DNA of 64,000 bases from Oikopleura dioica (lineage: Eukaryota; Animalia; Chordata), in NCBI GenBank assembly GCA_907165135.1, contig OU015566.1, positions 2,790,001 through 2,854,000 on the forward strand. The letters are read 5' to 3'. Position 1 is the stretch's first letter; the number at the start of each line of letters is the position of its first letter. Of this stretch, positions 12,366 through 48,578 are shown piece by piece. Under the pieces are notes generated by a model that was not told where the DNA came from, did not search any database, and saw only the letters and a program-made list of their open reading frames with translations. The position numbers were made by a program, and so were the translations under genes.

Positions 12366-12397
<32 letters not shown>

Positions 12398-24930: not shown

Positions 24931-25008
24931 CATTAACTTATGAATCATAAGTTATGATCGATTCGGAATCTGAAATGAGTTTTCATGAAAATATTTCTTG
25001 TTTTTTTA

Positions 25009-25301
25009 TAAGAAAAGAGAAAAAAGGTTAACTTAGGCGTAGTCGAAATTCTAGAGTATAACTTAGTTGTTTTGATTATGGTGGCCAGTTCCGAGCGTGA
25101 GTGTTGTTGAAATCAGGTGCGCGGGTCACGATATTTCTAGAACGCTCCTGAGGATGGGCCGCGCTAAAGCAAAAAGTGAAAAACACTTCATTCTGAATTT
25201 TCTCAGAGAGGCATCAACACCTCTCGGAAAATTTTCTCAAAAAGCGCTTGAAGCGGACCGGAATCCGAAAACAAGCAGCTAAGAAAGAGAATTTGAAAAT
25301 T
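25009..25301 (+). repeat. Split direct repeat A1 (293 bp)
   Basis: Identical by eye to 40003-40295. Confidence 0.97.
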
Positions 25302-25368
25302 TTTCCTCACGAATTGACGCTCTCTGGAAAACCCCTACTCAGTGTGACGTTTATTCCACACGAGGAAG

Positions 25369-26010
25369 ATGCTTACGGAGGTCAACCCTCGTCGGACGGA
25401 CGTAGCCCATTGGCTGAGACAGAAGGATAATCCGTGGGTTGGAATGTCCGTCTTTGATTTCTCAGTCACGGAGCTTTTCTCCAATCTCGTTGTCACTAAG
25501 GCTACGACTCCCGTTGGAGGTAGAGCATGTGAATGCTAATCCTCAGTAGTTAATTTTGGTTTTCAGAAGGCGTCGTCTTCCTGGAGGAACTACGGACAGA
25601 AACCTTCACGAACACTAAGCGACTGATGGACCAGTGCTTCTTGATTCGTATTTCAACTAAGGATGGAGGCAAGAACCTCTCCTTCTATCACGACGCGAAA
25701 GAGTGAGTTATTCCCACAAAATTACGTTTCCTAAGAATGATTTAGCATGACTGAGGTCCTGCTCACGGCGGATGCGCTTAATGCCTGGATAAACCCGGAA
25801 CTTATTGGCACCATCGGACGGTGGAAGCTTCCTCAGGAAAGGTTGAAGAAAATCCTTGTCGTAAAAGTTCTAAGAAAAACAATTCTAGAAACCCGAATTG
25901 AACATTCATCATTAAAACCACATATGTGTATAAACTCAGTAAATTCATTTGGAATCATCCGGGAAACATGTCAAAGCGCCTTTATGGTTTACAAAAACAA
26001 ACAATTCTAG
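25369..26010 (+). CDS. Element gene 1, unknown function, spliced; 3' end unresolved (25901 or 26010, or joined to the large ORF)
   Basis: ATG 25369. Introns 25520-25566 (47 nt) and 25703-25745 (43 nt) keep frame into ORF 25747-26010. Confidence 0.6.
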
Positions 26011-26310
26011 AAGGTCCATTATTGCGAATCACACATCCTGCCGGGAGAGATATTTAAACCCTTTCCTCAGGCCAGATAAAAGCTGAGGCGACCGGAAAAC
26101 CGGTGATTTAACCCAAAAGATGGGAAAATAATGATTCTAGAAGCCATCTATATTACAAACTACATATCTAAGTAAAGGATTTTCGGTTCTCTAACAAGAA
26201 CGCCCTCCCGAGAGATATATTCCTAAGGATTCACTAAAAACTTAGTGGACTTAAAATAAACAATTCTAGAATCGTACAAAATCGCCCAGAAGGATAATCC
26301 AATTGCTAAG

Positions 26311-29300
26311 TTGATACCGTCTTCAAACCTCTCTAAGTTGCCGAAGATTCGGGTGCCGATAACCCGAAATGATTCCTTAGCGAAGAACTGCAGCCTTCGA
26401 GCGTTCGCCAGTCTTTACAAAGAGGATGAAGCGGAAAATCCGAAATACTTAGAAATCTGCTACGACTCGCCGCGCGAGGACGACCTCAACATAAGTCTTT
26501 GGGAAGCCGAGAACTTGAATGCGATCACTAAGGCTCAACGGAAATGGTTCGAGCGAGACCCAGCGGGAAAACTGAGATCCCCGGCGCCGGCTGACCCAAA
26601 GAAGCTACTGGACACGAGCACTTCAGCCTTGATCCGCTGGTGGACCAAACTTCTGATGAAGAAAGATACTCAGGCAGGCCATCTCGACTTAGATATCTCC
26701 ACCTTGCTCACTGAGGAAGATTTGGACGACATCTTTCGGTGGACCGAAACCGTGGACCAAGCGGATTTCAATACCCAAAATTTAACTAAGTTCCTCGCGT
26801 CTCGATGGATAAAGCGAACCCGACCACACACCCGCAGAATCTGGTATGAGAAAGACTACGTGGAGAAACTAAAAGAAACAGGCGGAAACCTAAGAGAAAC
26901 TACGAATCCTGAGATAGTTGAAAAGCTATACAAGCTCGCTGACTGCATTCGAATTGACCCGGGTAACCAATTCTGGAGATTCACCGCGGCATGGCTGAGA
27001 CAAGTTTACCAACTAAGTTACAGCTGGCACAAAAGCATGCAGCAGAACACTGAGGAAATCCCGGAGACTCTTTTCTTCTTCGAGAACGGCGCAGATTTGA
27101 CCAGACGCAAGAAGGAGAAAGATGAATACCTGAGCCCGATTCCCTCCGTCATTGAAGAAACGTCTTCGACCCCGACGGCCTGGTTGCTTATTGACACAGC
27201 CCCGCTGCAACTGGTTTTGATCAACTTAGAATACGATAAGGAAAGAATCACTCAGGAAATGTGGATCTGGCAGAAGCTGGCCAAGACGATGGGCGTCAAG
27301 AAAGAAGTCCAAGAGTCGATTCGACGATGGATAGCCACAACTCAGAGACAGGGCTTTCGCCAAGCTGCGGATGATTGGAAAAACTTAGTGGAGAAAGTTA
27401 ACGATCGTAACTGCGAAGGAAACCTGAGGGTGTTAATCGAACCATGGGCAAATTCGACCGACGAACAAATGTTGAAGAACATCCGACAGACTCTGATTTA
27501 CTTAGCAAACGACGACATCATGGTCACCAGAGCCCGACTTAGAAAAATCCTAGGAAAGCAGAGGGTTTCAAACGAAGTTATCAACTTTGAAGATATTGAA
27601 ACGGTCGAGGCTGACTCCCTCCCATACGATTTTACGACTCAGATTCTCAACGGCGGCCCAGTCAGAGTCTTCCAAACTTCCTCAGAACACAGACCGGGCA
27701 TCTGCAGAGTCATCGGCTGTTCTCGACGCAGCGGAAACTTTCAGTGCTGCAACAAGTGCGGACAAGCCCTCCCGATGATTTTCGACAACCTGAGAGACTC
27801 AAGAATGGTCGTCGACCTATCCCAACCCACTGAGAAGAAAGTAATTGCGCGGGAGCGATGGACGGAACCGAAAATCATGAACGACGTTCACCCACACACC
27901 CGAGCTGAAATCCACGCCGACATCATCGACATTCAATCCACTCAGAGGGAAATGGGTGGCGCCCGCGACAAAATTGCGGCGATTCTGGCTGAGAAATATC
28001 TGTCAGGAGTTCAACGAGACTGGGGCCACTCGTATTACCGCAATAATGAAAATCTACTGAGAAATATGAGGGACTTCGCGGAAAACTTCCAAACCCTTAA
28101 GGAAAAAGCTCACTGGTGCTGCCTTCAAGAGCAAACGGAAGGCGTGGCGATCCTCTTTCCTCTACTCAGCATCAACGACGATGGCAAAAGAAAATACGCC
28201 GACCCTCTCTTAGTCCAGATAACTAAGGGATCTTACTCGAGAGGGATCCTGCTCCGCGAATTACCCGACAACACTGAGAAACTCTGGACTAAAACTAAGT
28301 TTAAACTGAGACACGTGGACGTCCTGGCCTTCATCGACCAAGTCTCCCAGCTCGCTGAAATGTACGACGCTGAAAACTACCTCCCTGAGTTCGAAGTAAT
28401 GCGCGACATTATCACTAAGCAAAAGGGAATCGACATCGCCATCCTGACCGAAACACACAGGGAATTCGAAAAACTCTCAAATCTCCTGCTACGAGAATTG
28501 GTCGACGACGTGGAAAACAGGGGGGCCAGAACCCAGTACCCACAAATCTTAGGACACGGCTCAGTATATGGTTTCTCAGTAATTGACCGTTTTGATGGCC
28601 GATCGAAACAAACCAAAACTTTCCTCAGACCAGTCCAAAAAGGCGCTCATCTTGGAATGCCGAAATCCGTGGACAAACACGAATCTCAGTCACTCCTGAA
28701 CTTCCTGAGCAACTTAGCAGTCGCAAGAAACACCGTCAACGGTTGTCATCCTGAGAACTTGATGGGCATCACAACCTGGAGCGTTTTGGGATCTTCTCAG
28801 GGAGCGGAATGGGCACGACAAGAAGAGGTGGTTGCCTTCATGGCATTGATCATCGATCATGCAGACCGTGCCATCCTGAGATTTTGGAAAATTGAAGAAG
28901 CTGAGTTGATCTACAAGGATGGAGTTTTCAAACCAACTGAGGAAACTCCTGAAATTACTAAGAAGAAGATGGCAACTTCTCAGGCGCCACGCGAATTACA
29001 AGCTCAGCGGGAAGAAACCCTCTGGAATAAACTGAGAAGTCACACGTTGTGGCCCCGCCGTTTCTTAGAATCGATCCGACAGTACCTTCAGCCAGACGGC
29101 CGAGTGGGAAAGCGCCTGTTGAAGCAGATTCTTCATGACTTTAATCGCTTCTATCTTACAGGATACATGGGCCAGAAGAGAGCCCTCATCCCGATAATGG
29201 AACGATACTTTCAACTCAGAGATGATGCGAGGAACACGAGAAATCGCCCACGGGATCCGACGAACAGACCTTTCCCTTCTAAGACTTGGCACAAACGCCA

Positions 29301-30576
29301 ACGAACGACCCGCAAAAAGCTCGACAAATTCGGTTTCCCGGAACCGGGCGATGACTCAGATTGCTCAGATTATAGCTCAGGCGAAAACGACCCCGAACCA
29401 AATTACGATACGGGACTTACATATGTAGCCGACTCAGCATCGGAACTATCCGACACTAGCTCAGACTCAGACTCGAACTCAGAGGATGGAGAAAGAAGCC
29501 TTCGCGTGGAAGAATCCTTGTCGAATGAAGAAATTCCCCCAGCCTTGGTGAGACTGGAGGATGCAGGATCACCGAACTTACCTCAGCTGGAAGATGTTCC
29601 CGAGCCACCACCGGCCTCAATGAGGGAAGAAATCGAAAAACTTAGTCAGAAAACTCAGAAGAATCACCCAGAGCCCGAACAACCTGGCGGTTTCAACAAA
29701 GAAAGATACTTCGAGATGCTGAAAGAAGAAAGGCACGCAAGAGTGCTAGCTGGCGAACTTTCTCACCTTTATTTATCTAAGGAAACAGAGGATAAAGCTA
29801 AGCAAGAAGCGAGGGATTTCTTCGCACGAAAAGCCCAGGAGTACGCGAAAAGAAATGTGGCAGCGGGGATGAGCTCAGAAAGCTCTTCTTCATCGTCCTC
29901 AAACAGCGAAAGTCCTGAAGAAGATGAGATTGTCATGGTCCCAAGACTGGAAGACGACTCCGGCTCGTCTTCGGATTCCTCAGTGGCAACAGTCATCGAT
30001 CAAACTGAGTTTAGAAGGCGACAAGAAGCGATCCAGAAGATCTCCGACGTCCAGCGAATCGAAACGGATGATAGACAACGGGAAAATTTAACTAAGAAAA
30101 TCCTTTCGCGAGAACTGCTTGGCGAAACTAAGAAAGAAGATGGACTTTCGGGGTCACGAAAGAACGCCGGAGCAGCCGGAAAACTTGCAACTGAGAAAGA
30201 GTTAGAGGAAATCACTGAGGACATGAGCAAACTGAGCGTCAGCAAGAGCGAGAACTCGGGAAACGACTCGAAACCGACACCTAGAAATCAAAATCTGCTC
30301 TTCGATGAAGCTAGACAGCTGAGACAAGGTACGGGTGGAGAGAGACCCGAGAGAAGATTCAGATTCGCCGATAACTCATCAAGGGAGCGACAACTAAGCG
30401 AAGTTCGTGTGATTCAGCGATTGAACTACCGACGAATGTTCGACTCAGCGGAACTGAACCAAAACGAGGGTCCGTCTTATTTGCCTGAGGAAGAAGACGG
30501 TTCACTTCCAGAAGGTAAAACGACACACATAAAAACTCCATTTAATACTAAGAAAGAATACTGGCTAAAAGATTGA
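26311..30576 (+). CDS. Element ORF, 1421 aa, unknown function; acidic/Ser-rich C-terminal third
   Basis: Uninterrupted ORF, open from 26260. First in-frame ATG is late (LLMKK), so the 5' end is probably spliced. Cys cluster CRVIGC...CCNKC. Confidence 0.85.
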   Translation: MIPSSNLSKLPKIRVPITRNDSLAKNCSLRAFASLYKEDEAENPKYLEICYDSPREDDLNISLWEAENLNAITKAQRKWFERDPAGKLRSPAPADPKKLLDTSTSALIRWWTKLLMKKDTQAGHLDLDISTLLTEEDLDDIFRWTETVDQADFNTQNLTKFLASRWIKRTRPHTRRIWYEKDYVEKLKETGGNLRETTNPEIVEKLYKLADCIRIDPGNQFWRFTAAWLRQVYQLSYSWHKSMQQNTEEIPETLFFFENGADLTRRKKEKDEYLSPIPSVIEETSSTPTAWLLIDTAPLQLVLINLEYDKERITQEMWIWQKLAKTMGVKKEVQESIRRWIATTQRQGFRQAADDWKNLVEKVNDRNCEGNLRVLIEPWANSTDEQMLKNIRQTLIYLANDDIMVTRARLRKILGKQRVSNEVINFEDIETVEADSLPYDFTTQILNGGPVRVFQTSSEHRPGICRVIGCSRRSGNFQCCNKCGQALPMIFDNLRDSRMVVDLSQPTEKKVIARERWTEPKIMNDVHPHTRAEIHADIIDIQSTQREMGGARDKIAAILAEKYLSGVQRDWGHSYYRNNENLLRNMRDFAENFQTLKEKAHWCCLQEQTEGVAILFPLLSINDDGKRKYADPLLVQITKGSYSRGILLRELPDNTEKLWTKTKFKLRHVDVLAFIDQVSQLAEMYDAENYLPEFEVMRDIITKQKGIDIAILTETHREFEKLSNLLLRELVDDVENRGARTQYPQILGHGSVYGFSVIDRFDGRSKQTKTFLRPVQKGAHLGMPKSVDKHESQSLLNFLSNLAVARNTVNGCHPENLMGITTWSVLGSSQGAEWARQEEVVAFMALIIDHADRAILRFWKIEEAELIYKDGVFKPTEETPEITKKKMATSQAPRELQAQREETLWNKLRSHTLWPRRFLESIRQYLQPDGRVGKRLLKQILHDFNRFYLTGYMGQKRALIPIMERYFQLRDDARNTRNRPRDPTNRPFPSKTWHKRQRTTRKKLDKFGFPEPGDDSDCSDYSSGENDPEPNYDTGLTYVADSASELSDTSSDSDSNSEDGERSLRVEESLSNEEIPPALVRLEDAGSPNLPQLEDVPEPPPASMREEIEKLSQKTQKNHPEPEQPGGFNKERYFEMLKEERHARVLAGELSHLYLSKETEDKAKQEARDFFARKAQEYAKRNVAAGMSSESSSSSSSNSESPEEDEIVMVPRLEDDSGSSSDSSVATVIDQTEFRRRQEAIQKISDVQRIETDDRQRENLTKKILSRELLGETKKEDGLSGSRKNAGAAGKLATEKELEEITEDMSKLSVSKSENSGNDSKPTPRNQNLLFDEARQLRQGTGGERPERRFRFADNSSRERQLSEVRVIQRLNYRRMFDSAELNQNEGPSYLPEEEDGSLPEGKTTHIKTPFNTKKEYWLKD

Positions 30577-30640
30577 TTAAAGGCAGCTTTTTCGGACCAG
30601 GATATAAAATTTCATTTGAAATAGTTCCGCTAAGCATTTC

Positions 30641-31250
30641 ATGAACCGGTATTTCCAGCTACTAAATTTAACTAAAATATGGTGTTGACTTTGTTAACAA
30701 AATTATCCTTACTAACTTAGAATTATAGTTCCAGCCGGCATTTACGGTCAGAGCTCGAGATTTACACGCCGGGGACCTACTGGCGAGTCCGAGCGAGAAA
30801 TCCTACGACTAAGACAGATCGGAATCACCAGGGAAGCCCAAGCAGTCGAAACAGCCGCCTCCACGTGGTCCGAAACTCAGGTCAAGAGGATTGAAATGGC
30901 CGCTTATACGGTCACGACCCTTTACAACTCAGTCACAGATGATGTGCTCTTACAGGTAGCTCAGTAATTCAAGTTTCTCGGGAAATTAATGAAATCTCAG
31001 GCACAAGACGACTTGGCACGTTTTGCCTTAGAAGACGGCGCTCAACTCACACGCTTACTTCACCAACTAAGTTTAACTCGAAGAGACGCCTTTTTCAACC
31101 CGTCAGTTTTGCGGCTCTCTATTTACCACGCGCTCAGACGAATGCAGAAACTGGTAAGAACTGAAACTCGGACCCAGAACTAAGTAAGTGGTTCAGGGAC
31201 AGGTTAAAACATGGTGGAAGGACTTCATCCCGAAGAGCCGAGAAGATTGA
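30641..31250 (+). CDS. Element gene 3 (~150 aa), unknown function, spliced; first exon tentative
   Basis: Exons 30721-30955, 31001-31153 and 31197-31250 joined by 45- and 43-nt GT-AG introns in phase 0. Confidence 0.6.
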
Positions 31251-31547
31251 AAACCGAAAAAACCAATAACTTAGAACAGTAAAATTTTCCTTTCTACTGA
31301 GAAAACTTCAAACTTAGTCTGTATCCATTTATCAATACACTTATCTCATTGACAAGCAAAAACGCTACGCCGAGAATTCACAACTTCCGTGGTCAGATTA
31401 CAGCCGAGAAGCCCGGTGAAATGGGAGACCCCAAAGTACTCGGTGCTTCGGAGCGGAATGAAGGAGTCGGTGACTCTGAGGCCTCGGTGGTTATGAATTC
31501 TTGGAGGGCAATTTTTGTTATATATACTCAGGTTCAAAGGCTTCAGA

Positions 31548-32736
31548 ATGAGCAAAACTCGCAAGCATAACTCGATTCCCCCAACTCAAACTGAGCAAGA
31601 TCAAGAGCCTCAACTTGGAACAAGCGGCTCAGTGCAGGAAAAACTCAGTGATAGCGGAGAATGTACGATCAAGGTGTTGCAAGAACAAGTCATCACTTTG
31701 CAGGCGCAAGTCAAGCTTGTCGACTCGGTGGTCAAAAATCAAGCACACCTGGAGAATTCCGTGGATACCTTAGCAAACCAACTTCACTTAGCACACCAGC
31801 ACAACGACACGGTGGTCCCGACAGACTACACACGCGATTTAACTGAGATTGAAAAAGAAACCGGCCGTTTCTCGAAACCGATCGAAATTTCGGTTCAACA
31901 GGCTTATAGAGTCGAAGCAACTTACACTCAGATGCTGGCCCTAACACTGGGAAGAGAAGCTAAATGTCTCTACGCGGCAACACGTTTCTCCCTGTACGAT
32001 CTTTTTCCCAATCTTACCTCAGAACAGACAATGGTAAAGAAAGTCCCACTCGACGCCAGCATCTATAAAGAATTTGCCGACGTCAATGCACTACTTAGAG
32101 AACTCATGGACGAACGCAAGGAGAAACGAACGTGGTCTTTAAATCTGAGAGATGGCCTTTTTATCGTAGCACGGTGAGTACTCAAAGACCTTAAAACTTC
32201 ACTTTAAGATTCCCGTCAAAAATTTTCCGTACTAAATAACGTAGACTCCCTAGAATGTATTTCTTGTAAATCTTCGTTATATAAATCTTGAACGTTCTTT
32301 AGTAGTTGAAACGAATACAAACTTAGTGATTCCTCGACAAACTGAGTTATTTAGAAACACCTACCAAGCCTTCTTCGTCGATCTTCTCCGGGCAGTCACG
32401 GCCCCAAACATCTTCGAGCTGTCCCTGGGAACTTTATCTCACTTAGTCAGAACATCGAAGGATGGCCTACAACGTTTATTCGGACGACACAATAACACCG
32501 TCTACAGAATGGACGACTGGCTGAGAATGTCTGAGAGCCCTACTTTTACCAGACAGAACGCACTACAAGAACTAAGAAACCTCTTCCCACTCAAGTCGGA
32601 GACATCGAAGATGGTTTTCACAGCACTGGCCTTGGATAAAGCAGATGAGGCTCTCGCAGCCGGCATCGATGATTGGCATGCCACGTCCTCGAAATACGAC
32701 TTAGAAGAAGAAGGAGAAATCCCGACGACTACTTAA
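31548..32736 (+). CDS. Element gene 4, coiled-coil N-terminal half, possible Gag/ORF1-like; join between 31548-32173 and 32326-32736 unresolved
   Basis: cttcag|aATG start. Heptad-like VLQEQVITLQAQVKLV. GTGAGT donor at 32174. Confidence 0.55.
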
Positions 32737-32936
32737 AACTCAGACTCAGAGGAAGAGGCCGGAAACATCTACGAAAATTTCGTCAGGAAAGCCAAAAGAG
32801 CCCGACTATAAAGAAGGAATAATTTTACTTAGATCATAAATAACTACTGAGATAAAAACAACTGAGAGTTGAATTATGTAATCTGCCTTTACAATTAAAT
32901 ATATCCAATAAGGAAATTCCACGTCCACATTTCAGA

Positions 32937-35345
32937 ATGACAGATAATTATAACTTTCATGAGGCGCGCGCGAAAACGTTGGAATTAATAAAAGAAGGAA
33001 AATTCGATTATCGCAACTCAGATGAAATTGCAGCATGCAAGCTCGATCAACTGGAACGAGACAAGAATACACCGATTTGGAACACTCAGGACTGGATAGC
33101 TTATGGATTAAGATGCTTAGATAACTTAGAAAAATACGATAACGGGAACCTTGTACTCGACTGGGAGTTAATAAGGTTTAGAGCAGAGTCAGAATTCCAA
33201 GCAGGTTCGTTTTCTAAAATGTCCCCAATTTGGTTTTTAATCTCGAACAGACTTAGGCCCCAAGACCGCGGCGAAATTTATCACACCATTCATAAAGGAG
33301 TAAACCTGTTCGATAATTTAACTAAGATATCGGAGAAAAAACCAATAATTTATAAGAACAAATCATTTTTTACTAAGAAAATTACTAACCCAGACAATGC
33401 CTCGATTTGCCACAAGGAGGAAGTGGTCTGGGCAGAAAAGTACCCATACCCGCGAGAGGTGTGGACCCCAGTCTTCAGAAATGATAAGGGAAACATTGAG
33501 AACTTAAGTTTTAGAAACCCAAAGTCCATCACCAAGTACCACTCCGTTATTACTAAGCAATTAATTAAATGGTCCAACTCGGGGAGTATTGAGTGGGTTC
33601 CCTGGCATCACGTTCAAAGACCCTTAATGATCGGAAATATAGTTATCGCCCCAAAAGCAGGACCTGAGCTCTATCGAATGTGCTATAACGGGGGCCCCAT
33701 AAAGTTCTGTGAAGAGCACAAACAACCCTGCCACTTAGATACAGCCGCAATGGCTCTGGATCACCTAGAAAAAGGGGACTTGCTGACCAAAGTGGACGAC
33801 AAGTCGGGTTTCCACCAACTTTTCTTAGATAAATTTAGCCGAGAAATGGCATATTGCTCGTACGGGGGAGAACTCTTTCGTTACTCAGCGGCCGCGTTCG
33901 GTCTCCCTAAGATTCCCGGAGTCTACCAAATGATAAACAACGTGGCAATTAATTTTCTGAGAGAAAGGGGCCACCAGGCCTTCTTATACTTAGATGACAG
34001 ACTTTTTATCACAAGACCAAAAACTAAGACAGAAGCGGAAGACCTTCTCAAAGGGAAAAAGGTCCCCGAGGGACCTTTCTTAGGAATGATGATAATGACG
34101 GCCTTGGGAACTTATATTAATCGACCAAAGAGCGAGCTGGTTCCCACCAGAAGAATAGAATTTTTAGGTTTTATAATGGACACCGATAAATGCACGGTTG
34201 AGATCCCACCGGGAAAGTGGGAGAAGTTTTCTGAAGAATCTAAGGAAATCTTGAAGAAATCCAAAGTCTTATTTAAGGACTTGGAAAAGCTAAGGGGGAA
34301 GATGGCGTCTTTCGCGTTGGTCGCCTTAAATATGAGACTCTACATAAGACGGATAACTGAGGCTCTGGTTAGATCGGAAGGAGAGGATTACGTTAAAATG
34401 ACTCAGGATATTAAGGATGAAATTAATGAATGGCTCAGCTCGAAATACGTAGCCAAAAGTAGATCTTGGCTCAAGCCGGGTATTGTCAAAGCCAGGATAA
34501 CTGAGGTACATACAGACGCAAGCAATTATGCGGCTGGAGTCACCATCGAATCGGAAAACTTAGATATTAATGTCCCCTATACGGAAGGTGATGCGATAAG
34601 CAGAGACCCCATACACCTAAAAGAGGCATACGCCGTTTTGTACACACTCAGAAATTTCGGGAAAAAGTTTCGAAACCGCAGACTTAGCTTTAAAAACGAC
34701 AACATGGCTGTCGTCAGAACTTTCGAGCACGGCTGCTCGAATCCGGCCCTGAATAGACTAATCCGCAAGATCCATGAAACGGCGGCGGACAATAATATTT
34801 CCTTAGAAATAGAATGGGTTCCTACAAAAGAACAAAAAGCGGACGCGGCCTCGAGAATGATCGACTCACGTGAAGCTATCTTTCGCACTTCAGCTTTCAC
34901 TGAGATTGAGAGAACTCTCAAAATAAAATTTACCTTAGACGCAATGGCCAGCCCGAACAACAAGAAATGCAAAAACTTCATCTCTTGGAGAGAGGAGGAT
35001 AACACGTGGGCCTCAGATTTTTTCTCAGTTAAGGACTTCGGGGATCACAACATCTGGGTTTTCCCGCCCAAGAAATGCACAGAAAAGGCCTTTTTCTGGC
35101 TTAAGGAACGGGCGAGACGAAACACATGGGCGCTGGTTATCTTAGAGTATGAAGCGGTTTCTTCAATCTGGCCAGTGGCCACCGGCCCGGAATTTAGCAC
35201 ACTTAGAAATATTAAGAATAATCCTGTTCTCTTCCCTTCGAAAAAGTGGTCTGATAGCTTTAAGGGATATTGGAAAATTCCAAGCAAAACCACCTGTTCA
35301 ATCTTAGTGCATTATCCAACAAGAAAACGAGCTCTCCAAATTTAG
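32937..35345 (+). CDS. Pol: reverse transcriptase + RNase H + DIRS-type Dam-like methyltransferase domain (802 aa)
   Basis: RT: KVDDKSGFHQ, FGLPKIP, YLDD, IEFLGF. RNase H: VHTDASNY, HLKEAYAV, DNMAVV, KADAASR. MT: LDAMASPNNKKC, DFFS, WVFPP. Confidence 0.95.
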   Translation: MTDNYNFHEARAKTLELIKEGKFDYRNSDEIAACKLDQLERDKNTPIWNTQDWIAYGLRCLDNLEKYDNGNLVLDWELIRFRAESEFQAGSFSKMSPIWFLISNRLRPQDRGEIYHTIHKGVNLFDNLTKISEKKPIIYKNKSFFTKKITNPDNASICHKEEVVWAEKYPYPREVWTPVFRNDKGNIENLSFRNPKSITKYHSVITKQLIKWSNSGSIEWVPWHHVQRPLMIGNIVIAPKAGPELYRMCYNGGPIKFCEEHKQPCHLDTAAMALDHLEKGDLLTKVDDKSGFHQLFLDKFSREMAYCSYGGELFRYSAAAFGLPKIPGVYQMINNVAINFLRERGHQAFLYLDDRLFITRPKTKTEAEDLLKGKKVPEGPFLGMMIMTALGTYINRPKSELVPTRRIEFLGFIMDTDKCTVEIPPGKWEKFSEESKEILKKSKVLFKDLEKLRGKMASFALVALNMRLYIRRITEALVRSEGEDYVKMTQDIKDEINEWLSSKYVAKSRSWLKPGIVKARITEVHTDASNYAAGVTIESENLDINVPYTEGDAISRDPIHLKEAYAVLYTLRNFGKKFRNRRLSFKNDNMAVVRTFEHGCSNPALNRLIRKIHETAADNNISLEIEWVPTKEQKADAASRMIDSREAIFRTSAFTEIERTLKIKFTLDAMASPNNKKCKNFISWREEDNTWASDFFSVKDFGDHNIWVFPPKKCTEKAFFWLKERARRNTWALVILEYEAVSSIWPVATGPEFSTLRNIKNNPVLFPSKKWSDSFKGYWKIPSKTTCSILVHYPTRKRALQI

Positions 35346-35346
35346 A

Positions 35347-35790
35347 ATGGCCCCCTGGTTCGTTGCCTCAGTAAGAGCGGGAGACTACGCCTACAAAAAG
35401 CACGATGCAAGAGTTAACCTCTTCAACGGATACCAGTACCAGCTAGAGCAGATTCGGACTTCGAAGTTTTATAGCGGCTACAAAACTAAGTTAACAAGGA
35501 AACAGTGGGCCGACACGAGACCATCCTTGGAGGAATTACTGAGCGCAACATCGAAAGTCTTTCCTCTCTTCCGAACCACCTCCATGTCGTCGATCGAGAG
35601 ATGTATCTTGCTATCAACTCAGGACAACTTGAAATATGAATTCCTACACAACATCGGAGAAACACTGAGAGAAACTCTCGAAATGGAAGAAAAATACGTA
35701 AAATTACAAACTAAGATGACAACGCACATTCACTTAGACTGCTATACTTTCGCCCAAGAGGCAAACCTCTCAGCACCTGTCCTCGACTAA
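35347..35790 (+). CDS. Element ORF, 147 aa, unknown function
   Basis: Starts 1 nt after the pol stop (TAG-A-ATG). Confidence 0.7.
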   Translation: MAPWFVASVRAGDYAYKKHDARVNLFNGYQYQLEQIRTSKFYSGYKTKLTRKQWADTRPSLEELLSATSKVFPLFRTTSMSSIERCILLSTQDNLKYEFLHNIGETLRETLEMEEKYVKLQTKMTTHIHLDCYTFAQEANLSAPVLD

Positions 35791-35857
35791 GAAATTTCTT
35801 TTCTTGTTAACGGAAACAAATTTCATTTTAACCAAACTTTTATTTAACGAATTTAGA

Positions 35858-37521
35858 ATGGCCTTATTTACGACAAACCTAAATAAACCGTTATTATGGG
35901 ACTCAATGATCAAGGGTGAAACTAAGTCGAACATCCAGAGATTCATCGAACCAGTGGCAATTGATGAAAAACAATTCCGTGAAATCCACGAAGAAAACAT
36001 GAAGAACTCAGACTTCAAGCTTTACTACTCAGACATGAAAGAGACTAAGGAAAGATGGGAGCAGGCAAGACGTGAGTCTTCACAAGCCTTGGAAACACTG
36101 AAGGAATGGAAGAAGAAACTGGAATGTTTCCCTCTTCTAAAGAAGTCCAAAGAATCCGGATCGCTACTCAAGGGTAAAGACAAAGACATCTACGAACTAA
36201 GGGAAGAAGGATTGGCGGATAAAATCGAGGAAGCTAAGAAATTGGACGACGCCAAGAATAAAGAAAAAACTAAGCTAAGAGAGCAGTGGGTCCACGCTGA
36301 TCGCCTCTGGAAAGAATTTTCCCTGACAATGCTGGGCCAGCCCTTCGCCTACGAAAGCGACGGTAAATTCTTCAGAATCGGAGGAGGAACAATCTCACTA
36401 CGACAAAAACCTAAGAAAAATCTGGACGAAATGGGAACTGAGTTTCGGGAATTCTTGATGGATAAGAAGAGCGTTACAACGATGAGCTTTGCAAAAATAA
36501 CTGAGATTCTTTACAAGTAAGATACCAACCATAAAACTTAGAAGAATTCTCCCCATTTAGAATTTCAGTAGATAAACCCAGGCGATACCCTGATGTAATG
36601 AATCTTGTTGGACATTTATGCATGATTACTGCTAAACGCTAACCCTAGATACGAGAAAGCCTGCGAACCTGGAACCCACGATCGCGGACAAGTAGGAGAG
36701 GTACTCAACTTCGTCCGAGAAAATCCGACCTGCTCAAGACAAGATTTCTTAGATGAGGCAATGAAGATTGCAGATGCGGACTTCAAGGTCGAGCTTCAAC
36801 GACACATAAAATCACTAAGAAAAAACAAAGAATATGAAAACGATCTGAACAATTCAATCGACCCCACAACTGAGAGAGATGAAATACTGAAACAAGGACG
36901 CGCAGACTTCCAGGTCGCCAAAATGATGCAACGGAAGCTGGCACCCGTTCGGGAACATTTAACTGAGGAAGAAAGATCGAGGTAATCACGAACAATTATG
37001 CGGAACTTAACGCAATTCTTGAAATTAGAATATCAATCTTAGCACGACTTAAAATTATGTACCAGCTCAGAAAAAAGAAACATTACGGTTTCCATAACTT
37101 AGGATTTAGATATGGCCTCCAGTTCAGCAGGAGAGGGAGCCGCCCTGACAACCGACGAAACAACTTCCAAGAGCAGCGTCGACGACATGGAAACTCAGAT
37201 CGACGTGACAACGGCTTTAGAACTGAGCGAAGAGAACGATACTCAGGGCGGGACTCAGGAAGAGATCGCCGGGAGGGCTTCGATTACCGACGACGGGATC
37301 AACGCCCTTTCAATGACAACAGGCGGTTTCACAATGGCAACGGCAACCACAACAACTCAGGATACAACAACCGACGTGGTTGGGGCAGCAACAACAGAAA
37401 CAACTCAGGCAACTACAATGGCGGCAGAGGTTACCACGGAAGAAACCGCGACAACTCAGGTTACAACGAAAATCAACGACGAGGAAATGCTCAGCCTTCT
37501 GAACAAAAGATGGAACAGTAG
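35858..37521 (+). CDS. Element gene 7: helical charged protein with predicted Arg/Gly/Asn-rich RNA-binding tail (Gag/nucleocapsid-like), spliced
   Basis: atttag|aATG at 35858. ORF segments 35858-36520, ~36650-36981 and 37110-37521. Intron 36982-37109 is phase-compatible; the middle join is unresolved. Confidence 0.55.
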
Positions 37522-37676
37522 ATGATATGAAGAATATGACAACTGAGAGAACTTAGAATTACTTAGAAAAACCTTCCTTATGCTCAGTAATTGGAAAAGT
37601 CTGCACTTATCTTCAATATATCCCACGTATACCTCATATAACGCCACAGGATCTAAAAATTCTCCCGAAACTTAGA

Positions 37677-38770
37677 ATGAAAGACCGAGACTGGGCAGTG
37701 AACGAATGGGTCCGCGTGGGCCTGAAAAAGAATACCAACTCAGAACGATTGGACGACGAGAAGATGCAGGAGTTAGTAGGAAACTTAGAAATAGATAACC
37801 CGGGTAAACCCTACGGATGGACATTAATCCAATCTCAACTAATTTATGCACTAGAAGAGTCCCTAAGATATCAACTAACAAATGGTGCAATTCAGACGTT
37901 AAGATCCTACATAACTAAGAGAACCCGGGAGCAAGCGAAAGGAGAACTGTATGAGCCAAATCCGCCTCCCTTCTTTGGATGGGAGGACATGAAAAAGTAT
38001 GGAATACGATGTGGTACCCTCACCCAAAGAAAAACTTAGAAACTCGGCACAAGGTGGTGCTCGTGAGCTACATTTGCTACGTTACTGGAGCCAGAACTAA
38101 TGAAATTTGCAACATCAAGATCCAAGACTTAGAGGAACATCAAGAGGACGATCACACTTTCCTCAGAATGCCAATTAGGGTAAGCAAGAGTAACAGTAAA
38201 AAGACAAGGAGAGAAAGTGTGATCCTTATTTCTAAGCCAACGGATATTATCCCAGTCATGGAACGATTAAAACTCAGCATCGGGAAACGAAAGAAAGGCC
38301 CGGTCTTTCAAGAAATGAATACAGCTAAGGTCACTTATTTTTTGAAAAAGACAGCGAAAACCTTGGGCTGGAAGATCGCGCCACGGGCCCACGGAATGCG
38401 GTTGGGATACGTTCTCAACTCTTCGATCGGAGGAATCGCGGACGACGAGATCATCAACTCCTGCCGTTGGAGAGACGACCAAATGCTGAGATATTACAGA
38501 AATCACCACTTAGAAGCGACGAAGCATGGATCGGCCTTCAAAATATACCAACAAAACGAGAAACTGAGACTGGGAGACATCGAGGCTAAGAAAGCTTGGT
38601 GCGAAAGATCGACACAAACACCGGATTGGGAACCCCCTAAGATGGTCCAAACTAAACTGAGAACAATCAAGAAAATGGCGGATGGACAGACTCAGACGGA
38701 AGAAATTACATCCGAAAATCAGGAGGAAACTTCTATCTTCGAAAAATTTCTGAGAGACTCTCGACACTAA
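37677..38770 (+). CDS. Tyrosine recombinase, split by a -1 frameshift at the A5 run 37992-37996
   Basis: TGARTNEI (R), HGMR (HxxR), CRW and MLRYY (W, Y). Adding one A gives a continuous 364-aa ...WEDMKKVWNTMW... Confidence 0.9.
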
Positions 38771-38819
38771 ACTTAGAATTTAACAAGATTACCGAAGTTG
38801 ACAAAGACCGATCTTCAGA

Positions 38820-39864
38820 ATGCTATCCGTGAACATGCTCCGAAAAGGGCAACGACTCAACACTTGTGGATCACTCAGGTGTATCTGGTCTCCAGTCACA
38901 CCGGCCGATGCCTGTGATGCCCCAGAAGAGAGGAAGGACCAGCTCAACTTACAAGTCTCCATGGCCTGTCAGTCTGCCAGTTACTGGTATGCAAACAACT
39001 TAGTGAAAATGGTGAGAGATGGCGAAAACAAGGAAGAAGAGTTCAAGAACCACCTTGACACTTTAACTGAGAAACACCACTACGACTGGCACGAGGTGAA
39101 GTCTTTCTATCACAACGTAAAGAACCACTCAAACATAAACGCTGTGCTGGAGAAATGGGAAAGGTAGATCACCTACACGTGATTTATCGGGATACAAAAA
39201 ATTTTTTAGTTTAAAACAACTGAGTATCATCAAGATCGCCAGAAGGGACAAGAACGTCGACGAGAAGCTGGAGAAGATGGAGAGACGAATCGGCATCCAC
39301 TTAGCGCAGGAGGAATGCGGACTGGCAGACCTTGACCTTGGAACCGACTCGAAAGGGACAATCCAGAAAACTCTGCATAAAATCTGCGAAGAAGCATTCC
39401 TTAGTGACATACAGGTGAAGAAGCTTTGGCACTTAGCTTGTAGGGAACCGGGCCTCTCAAACAAGAAGACAAACATCTACGTGACGGGCGAAGCAACAAA
39501 CCTATACAGCTTAGAAGAGGAAATCGCCACTCATGCCCGTTGGGACAGGCTCGACAAGAAGTTCACGCTCGTCTATCTTTACGTGGATTCAGACGAGGCC
39601 CCCCTACTGGTGATGTATAATGGAGAAAATCCGACAATTCTAGACTCAACTCAGGATGACTGGACATTCAAAACTAAGACTTCCTGGACACGTAACGATA
39701 GAAAAATCAGCGAAATCCTTCAAGACTCAGAAAGCAAACCTCTACTCAGATATAACGACTCCACTCAGGCTGTTATCTTGTCACTCACAGGGGAACAGTT
39801 CAAGACTACGGCAGGAAGAAAACGACGAAACTCAGCATCACGACCTTTGACAGATCAAAACTAA
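38820..39864 (+). CDS. Element gene 9 (~332 aa), unknown function, one intron
   Basis: cttcag|aATG start. The 46-nt intron 39164-39209 (GTAGAT...TTTTAG) joins ORFs 38820-39167 and 39277-39864 in frame. AATAAA at 39908. Confidence 0.7.
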
Positions 39865-39961
39865 GGAATGTTATCTTGTATGTCTCCTCATGTATCAAAT
39901 TCACGGGAATAAACTTCATAAACGCCACACTGAGATGGGGTTCCAAATATGGAGAGGGAAC

Positions 39962-40005
39962 GTATTTGGTCTCCATTAGTTGTTATTTATTGATCTTTAC
40001 TGTAA
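39962..40005 (+). repeat. Split direct repeat B1 (44 bp), overlapping A2 by TAA
   Basis: gtatttggtctccattagttgttatttattgatctttactgtaa, identical to 42294-42337. Confidence 0.95.
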
Positions 40006-40295
40006 GAAAAGAGAAAAAAGGTTAACTTAGGCGTAGTCGAAATTCTAGAGTATAACTTAGTTGTTTTGATTATGGTGGCCAGTTCCGAGCGTGAGTGTTG
40101 TTGAAATCAGGTGCGCGGGTCACGATATTTCTAGAACGCTCCTGAGGATGGGCCGCGCTAAAGCAAAAAGTGAAAAACACTTCATTCTGAATTTTCTCAG
40201 AGAGGCATCAACACCTCTCGGAAAATTTTCTCAAAAAGCGCTTGAAGCGGACCGGAATCCGAAAACAAGCAGCTAAGAAAGAGAATTTGAAAATT
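40003..40295 (+). repeat. Split direct repeat A2 (293 bp)
   Basis: Identical to A1 at an offset of 14,994 bp. Confidence 0.97.
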
Positions 40296-42293
40296 CTCTA
40301 CCCACCCTTGCAAAAATTTCTCAGAACGAATTTAAAAACCATATAGATAACTGAGGAATAGGCGGTTAATAATTTTAACCTAAGATTGATTTCCGGGAAA
40401 CTTATTCGTAGAGTCACCACCATAACTTAGCTATAAGAACTTAGACACCGAAGAATACAACAATGAGAACGAGGGAGAAGGTAAACTGGAGATAGTGGGG
40501 AAACCATATCAATTACTAAGGAAGAAGTCGCTTATATTTTAACTAGGACGTGGATATTCGAGAAAACTCCTATAATTTTGGTAATAATTCGTACTTTTGG
40601 CAGAGCATTTCTAGCGTAAGGATCGATCACCATAACAAAGCCAAGAAAACTGAGATACTTGTATTTATCATTACGGGAAACAAACGATAAACTAAGATAA
40701 AGAATTGCACTAGTTTCTGTAAACTGATTGGTTAAACATACTAGAAAGATCTACGGACGGAAGAGATCCGAAGGATGCTAATTAAACTAAGCTACTTCTT
40801 CACTTTGTCTAGAACGCCAAATCTTAGAGTATAAGATATCGATTGAGACACGGGGAAAGAAATCCAAAAGTTTAGAAACCGAATGAGACTTAAGGTTTCC
40901 TCTGCTACTGGCTTCTCGCAGGGATCCAGCCTGAAAGCAGCTTTGGCCAATCTGAGTTCGAACACGGAGCTGGGATCAAGACTTAGTTTAGCGGCTTTCG
41001 TTGGATAGTCTCCTAGATGAAATTAAAAATGCCATAAAAACTCTCTCGGGCGACCGAGATAACAATCCTTTTGATATACAACAAATGACTTAGTAACTTA
41101 ACTATAATTCTTAGGATTATTAATCATCTTACTGAGTGTTAAGCTAGAAAACAACACGTGAAACGATATCAAGCTCGGTTCAACTACCTATACAATGGGC
41201 CATAATTTTTAGAACCATTTCTAAGTTTATTCAATTCCCAATCAGACCGGACATAGCAAAGTTAGGTAAAATAATCACCACGGTTAGAAATCTGTACGAT
41301 GATAATTTCGCTCTCTAGAAAGGGTATCAGGGGACCATAAAACATCTCAGATGGAATAAAACGGAAACTCAGGAAGAGCCGCGGGACGCGATTCAGGATT
41401 ATGATTTATCTTTAAAATGCGTACACTCGAAAACATCATGGCAAGTCCAGACAAACTTAGGGCATTAAAGAATGCGCTCAAGATTAAATCTCAAAAATGA
41501 TTATGAACCTAAGACAAGAATCGAATAACATAACCCTCAGATGAACTGATGACGGTGATTTCGACGAGTACATACCCCCGGCGTCTTTCGAGATAAAATG
41601 CTTAGCTACCATAATATTAATTATTCCGAGTGACTGAGACTCTCGAACAAATGACGGATACTTGAAGATCCTTTCTTAGGCCAGTAATTTAACTCTTCCT
41701 AAATGCTATCGAACTGAGACAATAAAACTAAATGTCCCGAGACACACCATTCATTCGAACGACCTTAAACCTTATCGTAGGATCACATGAGAAGTTACAT
41801 TTATCCTGAGTAGTTAAGGATGGGAACCAAGAGGCAAATTACCTTGCGAATTAGACAATTGAGTCGGATCATCGGCTAAAGCGAAAAATCTAAGGAAGAC
41901 TCTAAAAAAGGAACTTTAAGGTGCTCACACCCGTCGGGAATTCCTGAAACCCTCTAGAGAATCTCTTTCGGGAAGAACCAATCGATGCCATGACGGGCTT
42001 AGACTGAGTGAGGAGGCCCTTAAAACTGAGAGTTCGTGCAAATTAGTTACAAACAAGTTTTTCGTCACCACTAAAGAGTATTCTGAAACTTAGGAACACC
42101 TGAGATTAAGGCTCAAAAAGCACCGTTGTCGATAAAAAACCGTAATAACCCTTAAATAATGGTCACTAAGTAGTTTGTATCGAGACTTAATCTCCTTGGA
42201 TATAAGGAGTGATGAAAGATGTCTTGTGGACCTCAAGGATCATAACGGTAATAAGAATTTTTGCCCACCCTAGTTTACAGTAAGGATCGGTAA

Positions 42294-42337
42294 GTATTTG
42301 GTCTCCATTAGTTGTTATTTATTGATCTTTACTGTAA
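42294..42337 (+). repeat. Split direct repeat B2 (right terminus)
   Basis: Identical to B1. AT-rich host sequence resumes after TAA. Confidence 0.95.
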
Positions 42338-48221: not shown

Positions 48222-48578
48222 ACGATTCAAAAAGAAAAAAGTGTATTTAATAACAAACTGTTTATAAAAAAATCAATCCGCAAAAAGTTTTTGCCAAAAA
48301 CTGAAAGACTCTTTTTAAAAAAATTGCAATCGCTCTTTGATGTTTTCGAGTCGAAAAAAAATTAATAAGCAGGAACATGGATAAAATAAGGGTTTTAATA
48401 TTTCAACTTTGGGAGAAAAGTCTGAAGGAAAATCGCAATTCTTGATATCAGTTGGTAGTCGAGAATAGGGGTTCATTTTGACCAAATTTGAGCGAAAATC
48501 ACCCCCCATCAAGATGAATTTGGTCAAAATTTTCTGTATTTTTGATCATTTCCTGTTCTATAGACAACGATTTATTCA

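What the first reader, a model, noticed from the sequence alone, without database searches (positions are those of the whole stretch)
25009..42337. Palindrome CTNAG is about 4-5-fold enriched in an element that encodes a Dam-like methyltransferase
Seen (manual counts): ~21 CTNAG in 26281-27480, ~34 in pol 32941-35345 and ~33 in the noncoding 40296-42293, about 14-17 per kb. The flanking host 42338-44340 has ~7 (3.5 per kb). All four central bases occur, in coding and noncoding DNA alike. Inference: a symmetric dsDNA site under selection, possibly the target of the element's own adenine MTase (self-marking) or of another element protein. Caveat: motif IV reads FPPK rather than (D/N/S)PP(Y/F), so catalytic activity is uncertain.
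Basis: partly seen in the sequence, partly recalled or inferred. Interest (0 to 1): 0.8.

Follow-up and report, generated by a model that had tools for sequence, protein, structure and literature searches.

The report
Lineage-specific palindrome tags saturating giant retroelements
A 17-kb tyrosine-recombinase retrotransposon in an Oikopleura-like animal genome is packed with evenly spaced CTNAG sites, and its relatives are each packed with a different short palindrome kept by selection, which points to an unknown element-encoded DNA reader and gives a first testable lead on the unexplained "methyltransferase" domain of DIRS elements.

Summary
CTNAG occurs 290 times in 25009-42337 (16.7/kb). 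Dinucleotide-preserving shuffles give 75±8 (z≈26-29) and the flanks have 2.5-3.0/kb. The excess is found in all three frames, every ORF and non-coding DNA, and it survives synonymous-codon shuffles.

The element is a 17.3-kb PAT-like (split-direct-repeat) DIRS-order retroelement. It encodes RT, RNase H, an MT-like domain and a tyrosine recombinase.

Relatives carry other palindromes:
- CTAG
- CCTNNAGG
- TCCNNNGGA
- AACANNTGTT
- AACTNNAGTT
- CCN6GG
- GANTC (Oikopleura dioica)
- AGCNGCT (O. dioica)

Each is 3-15× enriched. Where flanks were available (window, O. dioica L015), the enrichment stops at the element boundary.

Sites are spaced more evenly than chance (CV 0.64 vs 0.98). They are also under purifying selection: 77% of CCTNNAGG sites are conserved against a 29% background, while one of the two central N positions diverges at the background rate.

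The sites are therefore selected duplex tags that co-evolve with an element-encoded, dyad-symmetric reader.

The link to the "Dam-like" domain is unproven. The domain has an MTase fold but FPP instead of NPPY. FPP is the norm for this family (128 of 145 best relatives). A 2026 preprint found no activity for DIRS DAM domains in E. coli. I found no earlier report of such tags.

The parts
25009..42337 (+). Whole retroelement (17.3 kb) carrying 290 CTNAG tags. It is A-rich on the + strand.
   Evidence: CTNAG density steps from 0-2 to 3-5 per 200 bp at both ends. Repeat structure. AT skew +0.16 to +0.31.
25002..25301 (+). Split direct repeat A1. The true element start is about 25009, after a shared TAA.
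   Evidence: 99% identical to 39996-40295. Junction alignment.
39957..40005 (+). Split direct repeat B1, abutting A2. This is the internal image of the circle junction.
   Evidence: 96% identical to 42289-42337. The CCATTA..TTATTTAT core is shared with the B repeats of L015 and L011.
39996..40295 (+). Split direct repeat A2.
42289..42337 (+). Split direct repeat B2, the right end of the element.
26311..30576 (+). ORF1, 1421 aa, no known domain; gag-like by position only. It holds 81 CTNAG sites.
   Evidence: 24% identity to ORF1 of L001.
31515..32736 (+). Two small ORFs (31515-32177 and 32326-32736), conserved only in the closest relatives.
32937..35345 (+). Intact pol ORF, 802 aa: RT (YLDD at residue 351), RNase H region, MT-like domain.
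   Evidence: Pfam RVT_1 29.5 bits and Dam 25.4 bits. 39 homologues found. YLDD.
34872..35342 (+). MT-like (DIRS 'methyltransferase') domain, residues ~646-802. The motif-IV equivalent FPPK lies at 35061-35072.
   Evidence: Alignments. AF2 pLDDT 88, with Foldseek hits to N-methyltransferases. FPP statistics. Coordinates.
35954..36982 (+). Homologue of a conserved protein encoded between pol and the recombinase. Relatives end in an (RG)n tail. In this copy it is interrupted by an in-frame stop region (~36518-36625).
37686..38770 (+). Tyrosine recombinase. The frame changes near 38000 compared with the single 525-aa ORF of L001.
   Evidence: Pfam Phage_integrase 31.1 bits, above the 27.1 cut-off. 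tblastn.
40296..42288 (+). Tail between A2 and B2, about 2 kb with no ORF of 120 aa or more. It carries 33 CTNAG sites (16.5/kb).

Best explanation
CTNAG sites are selected cis-acting tags on the duplex form of the element (the cDNA or circular intermediate, an RNA:DNA hybrid, or the integrated copy). An element-encoded reader with dyad symmetry recognises them and co-evolves with them.

Each lineage of this clade of giant split-direct-repeat DIRS-order retroelements has its own short palindrome. Sister lineages differ by spacing or by one symmetric base. The element body is saturated with the tag at an even spacing, so the function needs coverage of the whole element, by marking or coating, rather than one or a few sites.

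Shown here:
- the enrichment;
- its confinement to the element where flanks are available (the window and O. dioica L015);
- lineage specificity;
- even spacing;
- purifying selection on the specified bases.

Inferred:
- that the prime candidate is the MT-like domain fused to RT-RNase H. It could act as a true adenine methyltransferase, or, given FPP in place of (D/N/S)PP(Y/F), as a non-catalytic base-flipping or binding module;
- that divergence of tags keeps related elements in one host from cross-reacting.
For: 1. Enrichment. z=26-29 against dinucleotide shuffles. It is present in all frames and in non-coding DNA.

2. Same tag in the nearest relative. L016/L018 (59-65% aa identity) has the tag at z 15-18, and 10 of 22 sites are positionally shared against 0.4 expected at random.

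3. Different palindromes in other lineages:
- L001: ACTAGY.
- L002/20/21/22/33: CCTNNAGG, 11-13x.
- L004-7: TCCNNNGGA, 6.8x.
- L010: AACANNTGTT, 15x.
- L030: AACTNNAGTT, 15x.
- L011/12: CCN6GG, 3x.
- L009/L029: GCCTNAGGC-like.
- O. dioica L015: GANTC, 19.1/kb inside 2115-16818 vs 4.8/kb outside.
- O. dioica L037/38: AGCNGC(T).
- L039 (5 kb): TCNNNGA, 2.3x.

4. Palindromes dominate the rankings. The top 3+3 pattern is itself a palindrome in 7 of 12 lineages, although only 1.6% of such patterns are palindromes. Host flanks give best palindromes with z≤7.

5. The cross-table is diagonal: each element is enriched only for its own tag.

6. The tree places tag types in clades. Sister pairs differ at one symmetric position (AGANTCT/AGCNGCT; AACANNTGTT/AACTNNAGTT) or in spacing (CTAG/CTNAG).

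7. Two tag types coexist in one O. dioica genome. This argues for element-encoded rather than host readers.

8. Selection. Between L002 and L021 (79% nt identity), 36 of 47 CCTNNAGG sites are conserved. The figure for all 3+NN+3 windows is 28.6%, and this pattern ranks top of 265. Divergence is 0.01-0.08 at specified positions, 0.21 at the first N (0.08 at the second N) and 0.2-0.4 further out.

9. Spacing. CV is 0.64 against 0.98±0.05 for random placement. Gaps under 10 bp and over 140 bp are under-represented, and there is no periodicity. Five other lineages behave the same way.

10. Interrupted, odd-length palindromes with a free centre cannot be RNA self-pairing signals.
Against: - No reader has been identified. 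Apart from pol and the recombinase, only one poorly conserved protein with an RG-rich tail is shared, and the accessory ORFs have no domain hits.
- The MT-like domain lacks the catalytic D/N/S and shows no separate target-recognition domain. It evolves fast whether or not the tag differs, so co-variation gives no signal.
- Flank preference is strand-asymmetric in coding DNA. An A 5' of the tag on the sense strand counts for more than a T 3' of it (WIN 6.9x vs 2.8x). This hints at a strand-specific (RNA or hybrid) component. In non-coding DNA the flanks are nearly symmetric.
- Two lineages show weak or no tags: L013/14 have none and L008 has only GTCNGAC, 13 vs 1.6.
- Most relatives are metagenome contigs of unknown host.
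Confidence: 0.6

Rival explanations
1. The MT-like domain is an active N6-adenine DNA methyltransferase whose target is CTNAG (m6A at the A on both strands). The element is enriched in targets so that its DNA is densely self-marked.
For: - The domain is homologous to phage/bacterial Dam (PF05869, E=1.3e-5) and is predicted to fold as an amino-methyltransferase. The best PDB matches are CAPAM, Erm, KsgA and RsmD.
- The D..A..N segment aligned to the family's N-terminal conserved block is nearly invariant.
- All tags resemble Type II recognition sequences (my knowledge of those enzymes: DdeI CTNAG, HinfI GANTC, BfaI CTAG). All contain or need an adenine. In L037/38 only A-flanked GCNGC is enriched, 3-6x vs 1.0x.
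- A catalytic mark would explain how hundreds of sites per copy can be serviced.
Against: - Motif IV is FPP(K/F) in 128 of the 145 best relatives and N in only 1. The residue that contacts the target amino group is absent.
- DIRS DAM domains gave no 6mA in dam- E. coli (preprint).
- The deficit of sites closer than about 20 bp looks more like a binding footprint than a mark.
- No 6mA data for Oikopleura were found.
Confidence: 0.22
2. The tags act during reverse transcription on the RNA:DNA hybrid. The RT-RNase H-MT-like protein, possibly as a dimer, docks at each tag. This could place RNase H cuts and leave evenly spaced plus-strand primers, or could aid processivity on an unusually long (15-25 kb) template.
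For: - The reading-domain candidate sits next to RNase H in one polyprotein.
- Spacing is even and long gaps are avoided.
- Flank preference is asymmetric towards the sense strand in four lineages.
- These elements are 3-4 times longer than any DIRS1-like element described (<6 kb, PMC3266345).
- The preprint also suggests a DNA-RNA hybrid substrate.
Against: - The model is inferred only; no priming sites are known for DIRS elements.
- Palindromy is not required for primer selection.
- The flank asymmetry largely disappears in non-coding DNA.
- The 5-kb element L039 also shows a (weaker) palindrome excess.
Confidence: 0.12
3. The tags are binding sites for host proteins (transcription factors, insulators or chromatin proteins) that the elements recruit, for example to stay transcribed or to escape silencing.
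For: - Dense, evenly spaced and selected sites fit a coating or anti-silencing role.
- O. dioica DIRS copies carry an unusual mix of H3K9me3 with active marks (PMC5240408).
Against: - At least ten different palindromes occur across close lineages, and two occur in the same O. dioica genome.
- Single symmetric-base shifts between sister elements fit a co-evolving private reader better than switches between host factors.
- Host flanks show no excess of these sites.
Confidence: 0.08
4. Mutational origin: a biased repair, editing or RT-error process (VSP-like or deamination-like) converts near-cognate sequences into the palindrome without selection on function.
For: One-mismatch neighbours of CTNAG are mildly depleted (o/e 0.47-0.99). 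CTNAG is depleted in the CTAG element (o/e 0.29, or 0.41 after masking).
Against: - The depletion is spread across all twelve neighbours and is mostly the dinucleotide budget effect. No single precursor is missing, and CCNAG, CTNGG and CCNGG are unremarkable.
- Specified positions are conserved while the first central N diverges at the background rate.
- Spacing is under-dispersed. A mutational drive would give Poisson spacing.
Confidence: 0.03

Closest known systems
PAT-like / DIRS-order tyrosine-recombinase retrotransposons (Pat1, kangaroo, TOC, DIRS1; reviewed in PMC3266345)
   Same: A pol with RT, RNase H and an MT-like domain, plus a tyrosine recombinase. Split direct repeats A1...B1A2...B2. 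Insertion without target duplication; only a TAA is shared at the junctions.
   Different: The element is 15-25 kb, while all described DIRS1-like elements are under 6 kb. It has many extra orphan ORFs. It is saturated with a lineage-specific palindrome, which my searches did not find reported for any DIRS or PAT element.
DAM-carrying retrotransposons (Fernandez-Moreno et al. 2026, bioRxiv 10.64898/2026.05.21.726589)
   Same: The same Dam-derived domain fused to retroelement pol. Its function is unknown, and the authors propose an epigenetic role or a DNA-RNA hybrid substrate.
   Different: The preprint reports Asn-Pro-Pro as nearly universal. It reports no target motif and no activity in E. 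coli, and it does not mention Oikopleura or palindromes. Here the motif is FPP and a candidate target can be read from the element's own sequence.
Phage/bacterial orphan Dam-family methyltransferases and Type II recognition sequences
   Same: The tags are short, often interrupted palindromes. Specificity shifts by spacing or by one symmetric base, as among related Type II enzymes (established knowledge, not tested here).
   Different: In prokaryotes such sites are typically avoided or neutral in the carrier genome. Here they are 3-15x enriched and evenly spread. The catalytic motif is degenerate, and no nuclease partner was detected.
DNA uptake sequences (Neisseria DUS, Pasteurellaceae USS), Chi and KOPS: over-represented self-tags of bacterial chromosomes
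   Same: A short word is over-represented genome-wide. It is spaced more evenly than chance, has lineage-specific 'dialects', and is read by a dedicated protein (established knowledge).
   Different: Those tags are non-palindromic, oriented 8-12-mers on bacterial chromosomes. The tags here are dyad-symmetric 4-10-mers confined to a eukaryotic retroelement.
Pseudo-methyltransferases with a degenerate motif IV (e.g. METTL14, EPPL)
   Same: An MTase fold is retained while the (D/N/S)PP(Y/F/W) motif has lost the catalytic residue. The domain serves nucleic-acid binding (established knowledge).
   Different: There is no evidence yet that the DIRS domain binds anything. It is fused to RT-RNase H and is not part of a heterodimer.

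Membership tests
DIRS-order, PAT-like (split-direct-repeat) retrotransposon | Reverse transcriptase domain | tested here: met
   Pfam RVT_1 E=7.7e-7, 29.5 bits, which is 0.1 bit under the cut-off. YLDD is present at residue 351. 39 homologues were found, most with RVT_1.
DIRS-order, PAT-like (split-direct-repeat) retrotransposon | RNase H domain after RT | tested here: inconclusive
   The window protein gives no hit. Relatives give weak RT_RNaseH hits at the aligned position.
DIRS-order, PAT-like (split-direct-repeat) retrotransposon | MT-like domain at the C-terminus of pol | tested here: met
   Pfam Dam 25.4 bits, sub-threshold. A profile search finds 10,968 relatives. The predicted fold is that of an MTase.
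DIRS-order, PAT-like (split-direct-repeat) retrotransposon | Tyrosine recombinase | tested here: met
   Phage_integrase 31.1 bits, above the 27.1 cut-off. This copy shows a frame change near 38000.
DIRS-order, PAT-like (split-direct-repeat) retrotransposon | Split direct repeats A1...B1A2...B2 and no target-site duplication | tested here: met
   A1/A2 are 300 nt at 99% identity and B1/B2 are 49 nt at 96% identity. Only TAA is shared at the junctions. The O. dioica element L015 has the same architecture.
DIRS-order, PAT-like (split-direct-repeat) retrotransposon | Length about 5-6 kb with three ORFs | tested here: not met
   The element is 17.3 kb with at least ten ORFs. Relatives are 15-25 kb. 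PMC3266345 states that all DIRS1-like elements are under 6 kb.
Dam-family N6-adenine DNA methyltransferase (PF05869) | Score above the Pfam gathering threshold | tested here: not met
   25.4 bits against 28.1. Relatives score 14-25 bits.
Dam-family N6-adenine DNA methyltransferase (PF05869) | Class I (Rossmann-like) methyltransferase fold | tested here: met
   AF2 model with pLDDT 88. Foldseek probability is 1.0 to CAPAM, ErmE and RsmD, though TM-scores are only 0.4-0.5.
Dam-family N6-adenine DNA methyltransferase (PF05869) | Catalytic motif IV (D/N/S)PP(Y/F/W) | tested here: not met
   FPPK at residues 709-712. PP is invariant. The preceding residue is F in 128, Y in 12 and N in 1 of the 145 best relatives.
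Dam-family N6-adenine DNA methyltransferase (PF05869) | Methyl transfer to adenine in a defined DNA sequence | not testable with these tools
   The preprint found no 6mA gain in dam- E. coli for DIRS DAM domains.
Genome-wide self-recognition tags (DUS/USS-like) | Over-representation, even spacing and lineage-specific variants | tested here: met
Genome-wide self-recognition tags (DUS/USS-like) | An asymmetric, oriented word read by a known receptor | tested here: not met
   The tags are palindromes, and no receptor is known.

The most novel reading that the evidence does not exclude
Each lineage of these retroelements carries a private, fast-evolving sequence specificity in the manner of restriction-modification systems. 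The DIRS 'methyltransferase' domain, or a partner protein, reads a lineage-specific palindrome, and the element saturates its own genome with that palindrome. In this way it marks or coats its DNA as self and avoids cross-talk with rival elements in the same host. This would be the first functional handle on a domain whose role has been unknown since DIRS elements were described. It would also be the first self-tagging code seen in a eukaryotic mobile element.
Probability: 0.35. Interest if true: 0.92.

Novelty: categorically new. Interest (0 to 1): 0.86.

Why it matters
The role of the MT domain of DIRS elements is described as unknown in the 2011 review (PMC3266345). In 2026, heterologous expression still gave no activity and no target. 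The element sequences themselves now supply explicit candidate targets: CTNAG here, and GANTC and AGCNGCT in the sequenced O. dioica genome. The question can therefore be tested with existing long-read data and simple binding assays.

More generally, this is a eukaryotic mobile element whose whole sequence, coding regions included, is shaped by selection for a private palindromic word. Specificities shift between sister lineages. That behaviour is known from bacterial self/non-self systems but, as far as my searches show, not from retrotransposons.

It also defines a clade of giant (15-25 kb) DIRS-order elements in appendicularian-like marine animals.

Tried and rejected
- **Composition or codon artefact.** Rejected by dinucleotide, synonymous-codon and codon-order shuffles.
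- **Internal repeats as the source.** Rejected. Only the A/B terminal repeats and short chance pairs were found, and the sites are spread evenly.
- **The CTNAG spike at 50.6-51.0 kb as a second element copy.** Rejected. It is a (GCTCA)n-type repeat shared with O. dioica.
- **A CCNGG-to-CTNAG deamination or VSP-like drive.** No intermediate or precursor signature was found.
- **The recombinase crossover site as the tag.** The junction core is TAA within ...ACTGTAA and holds no CTNAG.
- **Helical or nucleosomal phasing.** None was found.
- **A reader among the accessory ORFs.** Pfam scans of the window and L011 ORFs found nothing. A word search with the conserved 418-aa protein found only itself. 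Its alignment shows a coiled region and an RG-rich tail, which do not suggest a sequence-specific reader.
- **Sequence search of PDB with the MT-like profile.** No hit.
- **IMG/VR scan for relatives.** None found.
- **Domain-wise divergence to see whether the MT-like domain tracks tag changes.** Uninformative, because the domain is the fastest-evolving part in same-tag pairs too.
- **GCNGC in L037/L038.** At first doubtful, because GCNGC is 1.3-1.8x everywhere, host DNA included. It was retained only in the A-flanked form AGCNGC(T).
Full report
**The observation.** CTNAG occurs 290 times in window 25009-42337 (16.7/kb). The left flank has 2.5/kb and the right flank 3.0/kb.

Two hundred dinucleotide-preserving shuffles give 76±7 (z=29). 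The next best of all 256 XYnZW patterns reaches z=4.9. A second run gives 75±8, z=26. The four CTNAG pentamers are four of the five most over-represented pentamers in the element and are unremarkable in the flanks.

Sites fall in all three frames of all ten ORFs. Counts are 3-5 times the number left by synonymous-codon shuffles, for example 81 vs 23±4 in ORF1 and 34 vs 11±3 in pol. Density outside the ORFs is 15.6/kb. The density steps up and down exactly at the element ends.

The separate CTNAG spike at 50.6-51.0 kb is a (GCTCA)n-type repeat and has nothing to do with the element.

**What the element is.** Repeats A1 (25002-25301) and A2 (39996-40295) are 99% identical. B1 (39957-40005) and B2 (42289-42337) are 96% identical. 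They form the A1...B1A2...B2 split direct repeats of PAT-like, DIRS-order retroelements. The three junctions share only TAA, so there is no target duplication.

The 802-aa ORF 32937-35345 has RT (YLDD) and a sub-threshold Dam match. ORF 37979-38770 is a tyrosine recombinase. This copy has an in-frame stop region in the gene between pol and the recombinase, and a frame change in the recombinase relative to the closest relative L001. I describe these breaks and did not mend them.

Flanking genes are 5-oxoprolinase, an MFS transporter and a rhodopsin-type receptor. CpG o/e is about 1. One repeat family is 76-87% identical to O. dioica. Together these place the window in an Oikopleura-like animal, not in human DNA.

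At 17.3 kb the element is three times longer than any DIRS1-like element described (<6 kb; PMC3266345).

**Relatives.** The pol protein has 39 relatives in a word search. Most come from marine metagenomes (46-61% identity) and several from O. dioica (~33%). I fetched 42 loci. They are also 15-25 kb and multi-ORF. The O. dioica copy L015 has the same split direct repeats at 100% identity.

**Scan of the relatives.** An unbiased scan of all 2+2 and 3+3 words with gaps of 0-8 showed the following.
- The nearest relative (L016/L018) shares CTNAG (z 15-18).
- Every other well-sampled lineage except one is saturated with a different palindrome.

| Lineage | Tag | Enrichment |
|---|---|---|
| L001 | ACTAGY | 3.3x for CTAG |
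| L002/3/20-23/33 | CCTNNAGG | 11-13x |
| L004-7 | TCCNNNGGA | 6.8x |
| L010 | AACANNTGTT | 15x |
| L030 | AACTNNAGTT | 15x |
| L011/12 | CCN6GG | 3x |
| L009/L029 | GCCTNAGGC-like | not computed for the full word |
| L015 (O. dioica) | GANTC | 19.1/kb inside 2115-16818, 4.8/kb outside |
| L037/38 (O. dioica) | AGCNGC(T) | 3-6x |
| L039 (5 kb) | TCNNNGA | 2.3x |

- L013/14 show no such tag, and L008 shows only a weak one.
- A motif-by-element table is diagonal.
- Host flanks give (CTT)n-type top words and no palindrome above z≈7.

On a pol tree, tag types follow clades. Sister lineages differ by one symmetric base or by spacing.

**Evidence for selection.** L002, L021 and L033 are 79-86% identical in DNA.
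- 36 of 47 CCTNNAGG sites of L002 are intact in L021. The figure for all 3+NN+3 windows is 28.6%, and this pattern ranks highest of 265.
- Divergence is 0.01-0.08 at the six specified positions. It is 0.21 at the first N (0.08 at the second N) and 0.2-0.4 a few bases away.
- WIN and L018 (63% nt identity) share 10 of 22 sites, against 0.4 expected at random and about 3.5 expected from average conservation.

Sites are under-dispersed. The spacing CV is 0.64 against 0.98±0.05, and the largest gap is 211 bp against about 365 expected. Neighbours closer than 10 bp number 8, against 22-44 expected. Gaps over 140 bp are too few, and there is no periodicity. L016, L018, L002, L021, L010 and L030 behave alike.

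One-mismatch neighbours are only mildly and uniformly depleted, so no directional conversion signature is seen.

**The candidate reader.** The C-terminal ~157 aa of pol align with the DIRS MT domain. AF2 (pLDDT 88) gives a compact Rossmann-type methyltransferase fold. Its best PDB matches are amino-methyltransferases: CAPAM/PCIF1, ErmE/ErmC', KsgA/Dim1 and RsmD.

The motif-IV position reads FPPK. A full profile search of 1.84 billion representatives finds 10,968 relatives. In the best 145, the residue before PP is F in 128, Y in 12 and N in 1.

The 2026 preprint on DAM retrotransposons reports no activity in E. coli and no target motif.

All tags contain or require an adenine. In L037/38 only A-flanked GCNGC is enriched.

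In coding DNA, an A 5' of the tag on the sense strand counts for more than the symmetric T. In non-coding DNA the flanks are nearly symmetric. I cannot explain this asymmetry.

Other shared proteins are the recombinase and an RG-tailed protein. Accessory ORFs have no recognisable domains.

**Conclusion.** The enrichment is real, selected and family-wide. The best reading is a private duplex tag that co-evolves with an element-encoded dyad-symmetric reader. I put true m6A self-marking at about 0.2-0.25.

I found no earlier description of palindrome saturation in DIRS, PAT or other retroelements. This absence rests on the searchable open-access library only.

Noticed in passing
window 50675-51076 (also 48146-48376): Short (GCTCA)n arrays separated by ~25-nt spacers. 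They are 76-87% identical to O. dioica L037:16076-18283. This MITE- or satellite-like family is shared with O. dioica and causes the second CTNAG spike. Flanking repeat pairs lie at 48146-48286/50531-50671 and 48324-48376/51098-51150.
   Followed up: partly
L013 (e.g. 452, 784, 1247, 3895, 4603, 4710, 5983, 7810, 8867, 9322, 10566, 12650, 13209) and L014: In the one related lineage without a short tag, a recurring signal reads AGTG-[perfect 10-14-nt palindrome centred on TTAA/TTTAAA, with arms that vary and co-vary]-CTCT. Most copies lie just upstream of called ORFs, so it looks like a gene-junction hairpin signal.
   Followed up: partly
window 35954-36982; L001 10946-12199; L015 14312-14833; L037 12902-13516; L038 12313-13218: A third conserved gene between pol and the recombinase encodes a protein that ends in a long (RG)n/RGG tail in relatives. 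The window copy has an in-frame stop region at about 36518-36625.
   Followed up: partly
window 37686-38770: The recombinase reading frame changes near 38000 compared with the single 525-aa ORF of L001. The element may be a slightly decayed copy even though its terminal repeats are 96-99% identical.
   Followed up: partly
window 39957-40005; L015 16339-16383; L011 18604-18656: The B repeats of distant lineages share a CCATTA...TTATTTAT core. This may be the recombinase or priming site at the circle junction.
   Followed up: no
L001, L018, L008 (whole loci): Possible cross-avoidance of sister tags. CTNAG o/e is 0.29 in the CTAG element L001 (0.41 after masking its own sites). CTAG o/e is 0.26 (0.53 after masking) in L018. 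L008 is low in both (0.45 and 0.56). Counts are small.
   Followed up: partly
window 25009-42337 and L001, L015, L037/38: Strand asymmetry of the tag flanks. An A 5' of the palindrome on the sense strand is enriched far more than the symmetric 3' T (WIN 6.9x vs 2.8x). The effect is weaker in non-coding DNA and remains unexplained.
   Followed up: partly
window 46103-46144; L037 19800-23300: Small hairpin palindromes (types AAGCCGCnnnGCGGCTT and ACCCTGAnTCAGGGT) recur in O. dioica host DNA, and one matches the window. They are probably MITE remnants. They inflate palindrome scores in that flank.
   Followed up: partly
window 1-25000: The left flank is rich in (CTT)n/(TCT)n-like low-complexity words (CTTN6CTT 106 vs 13 expected).
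   Followed up: no
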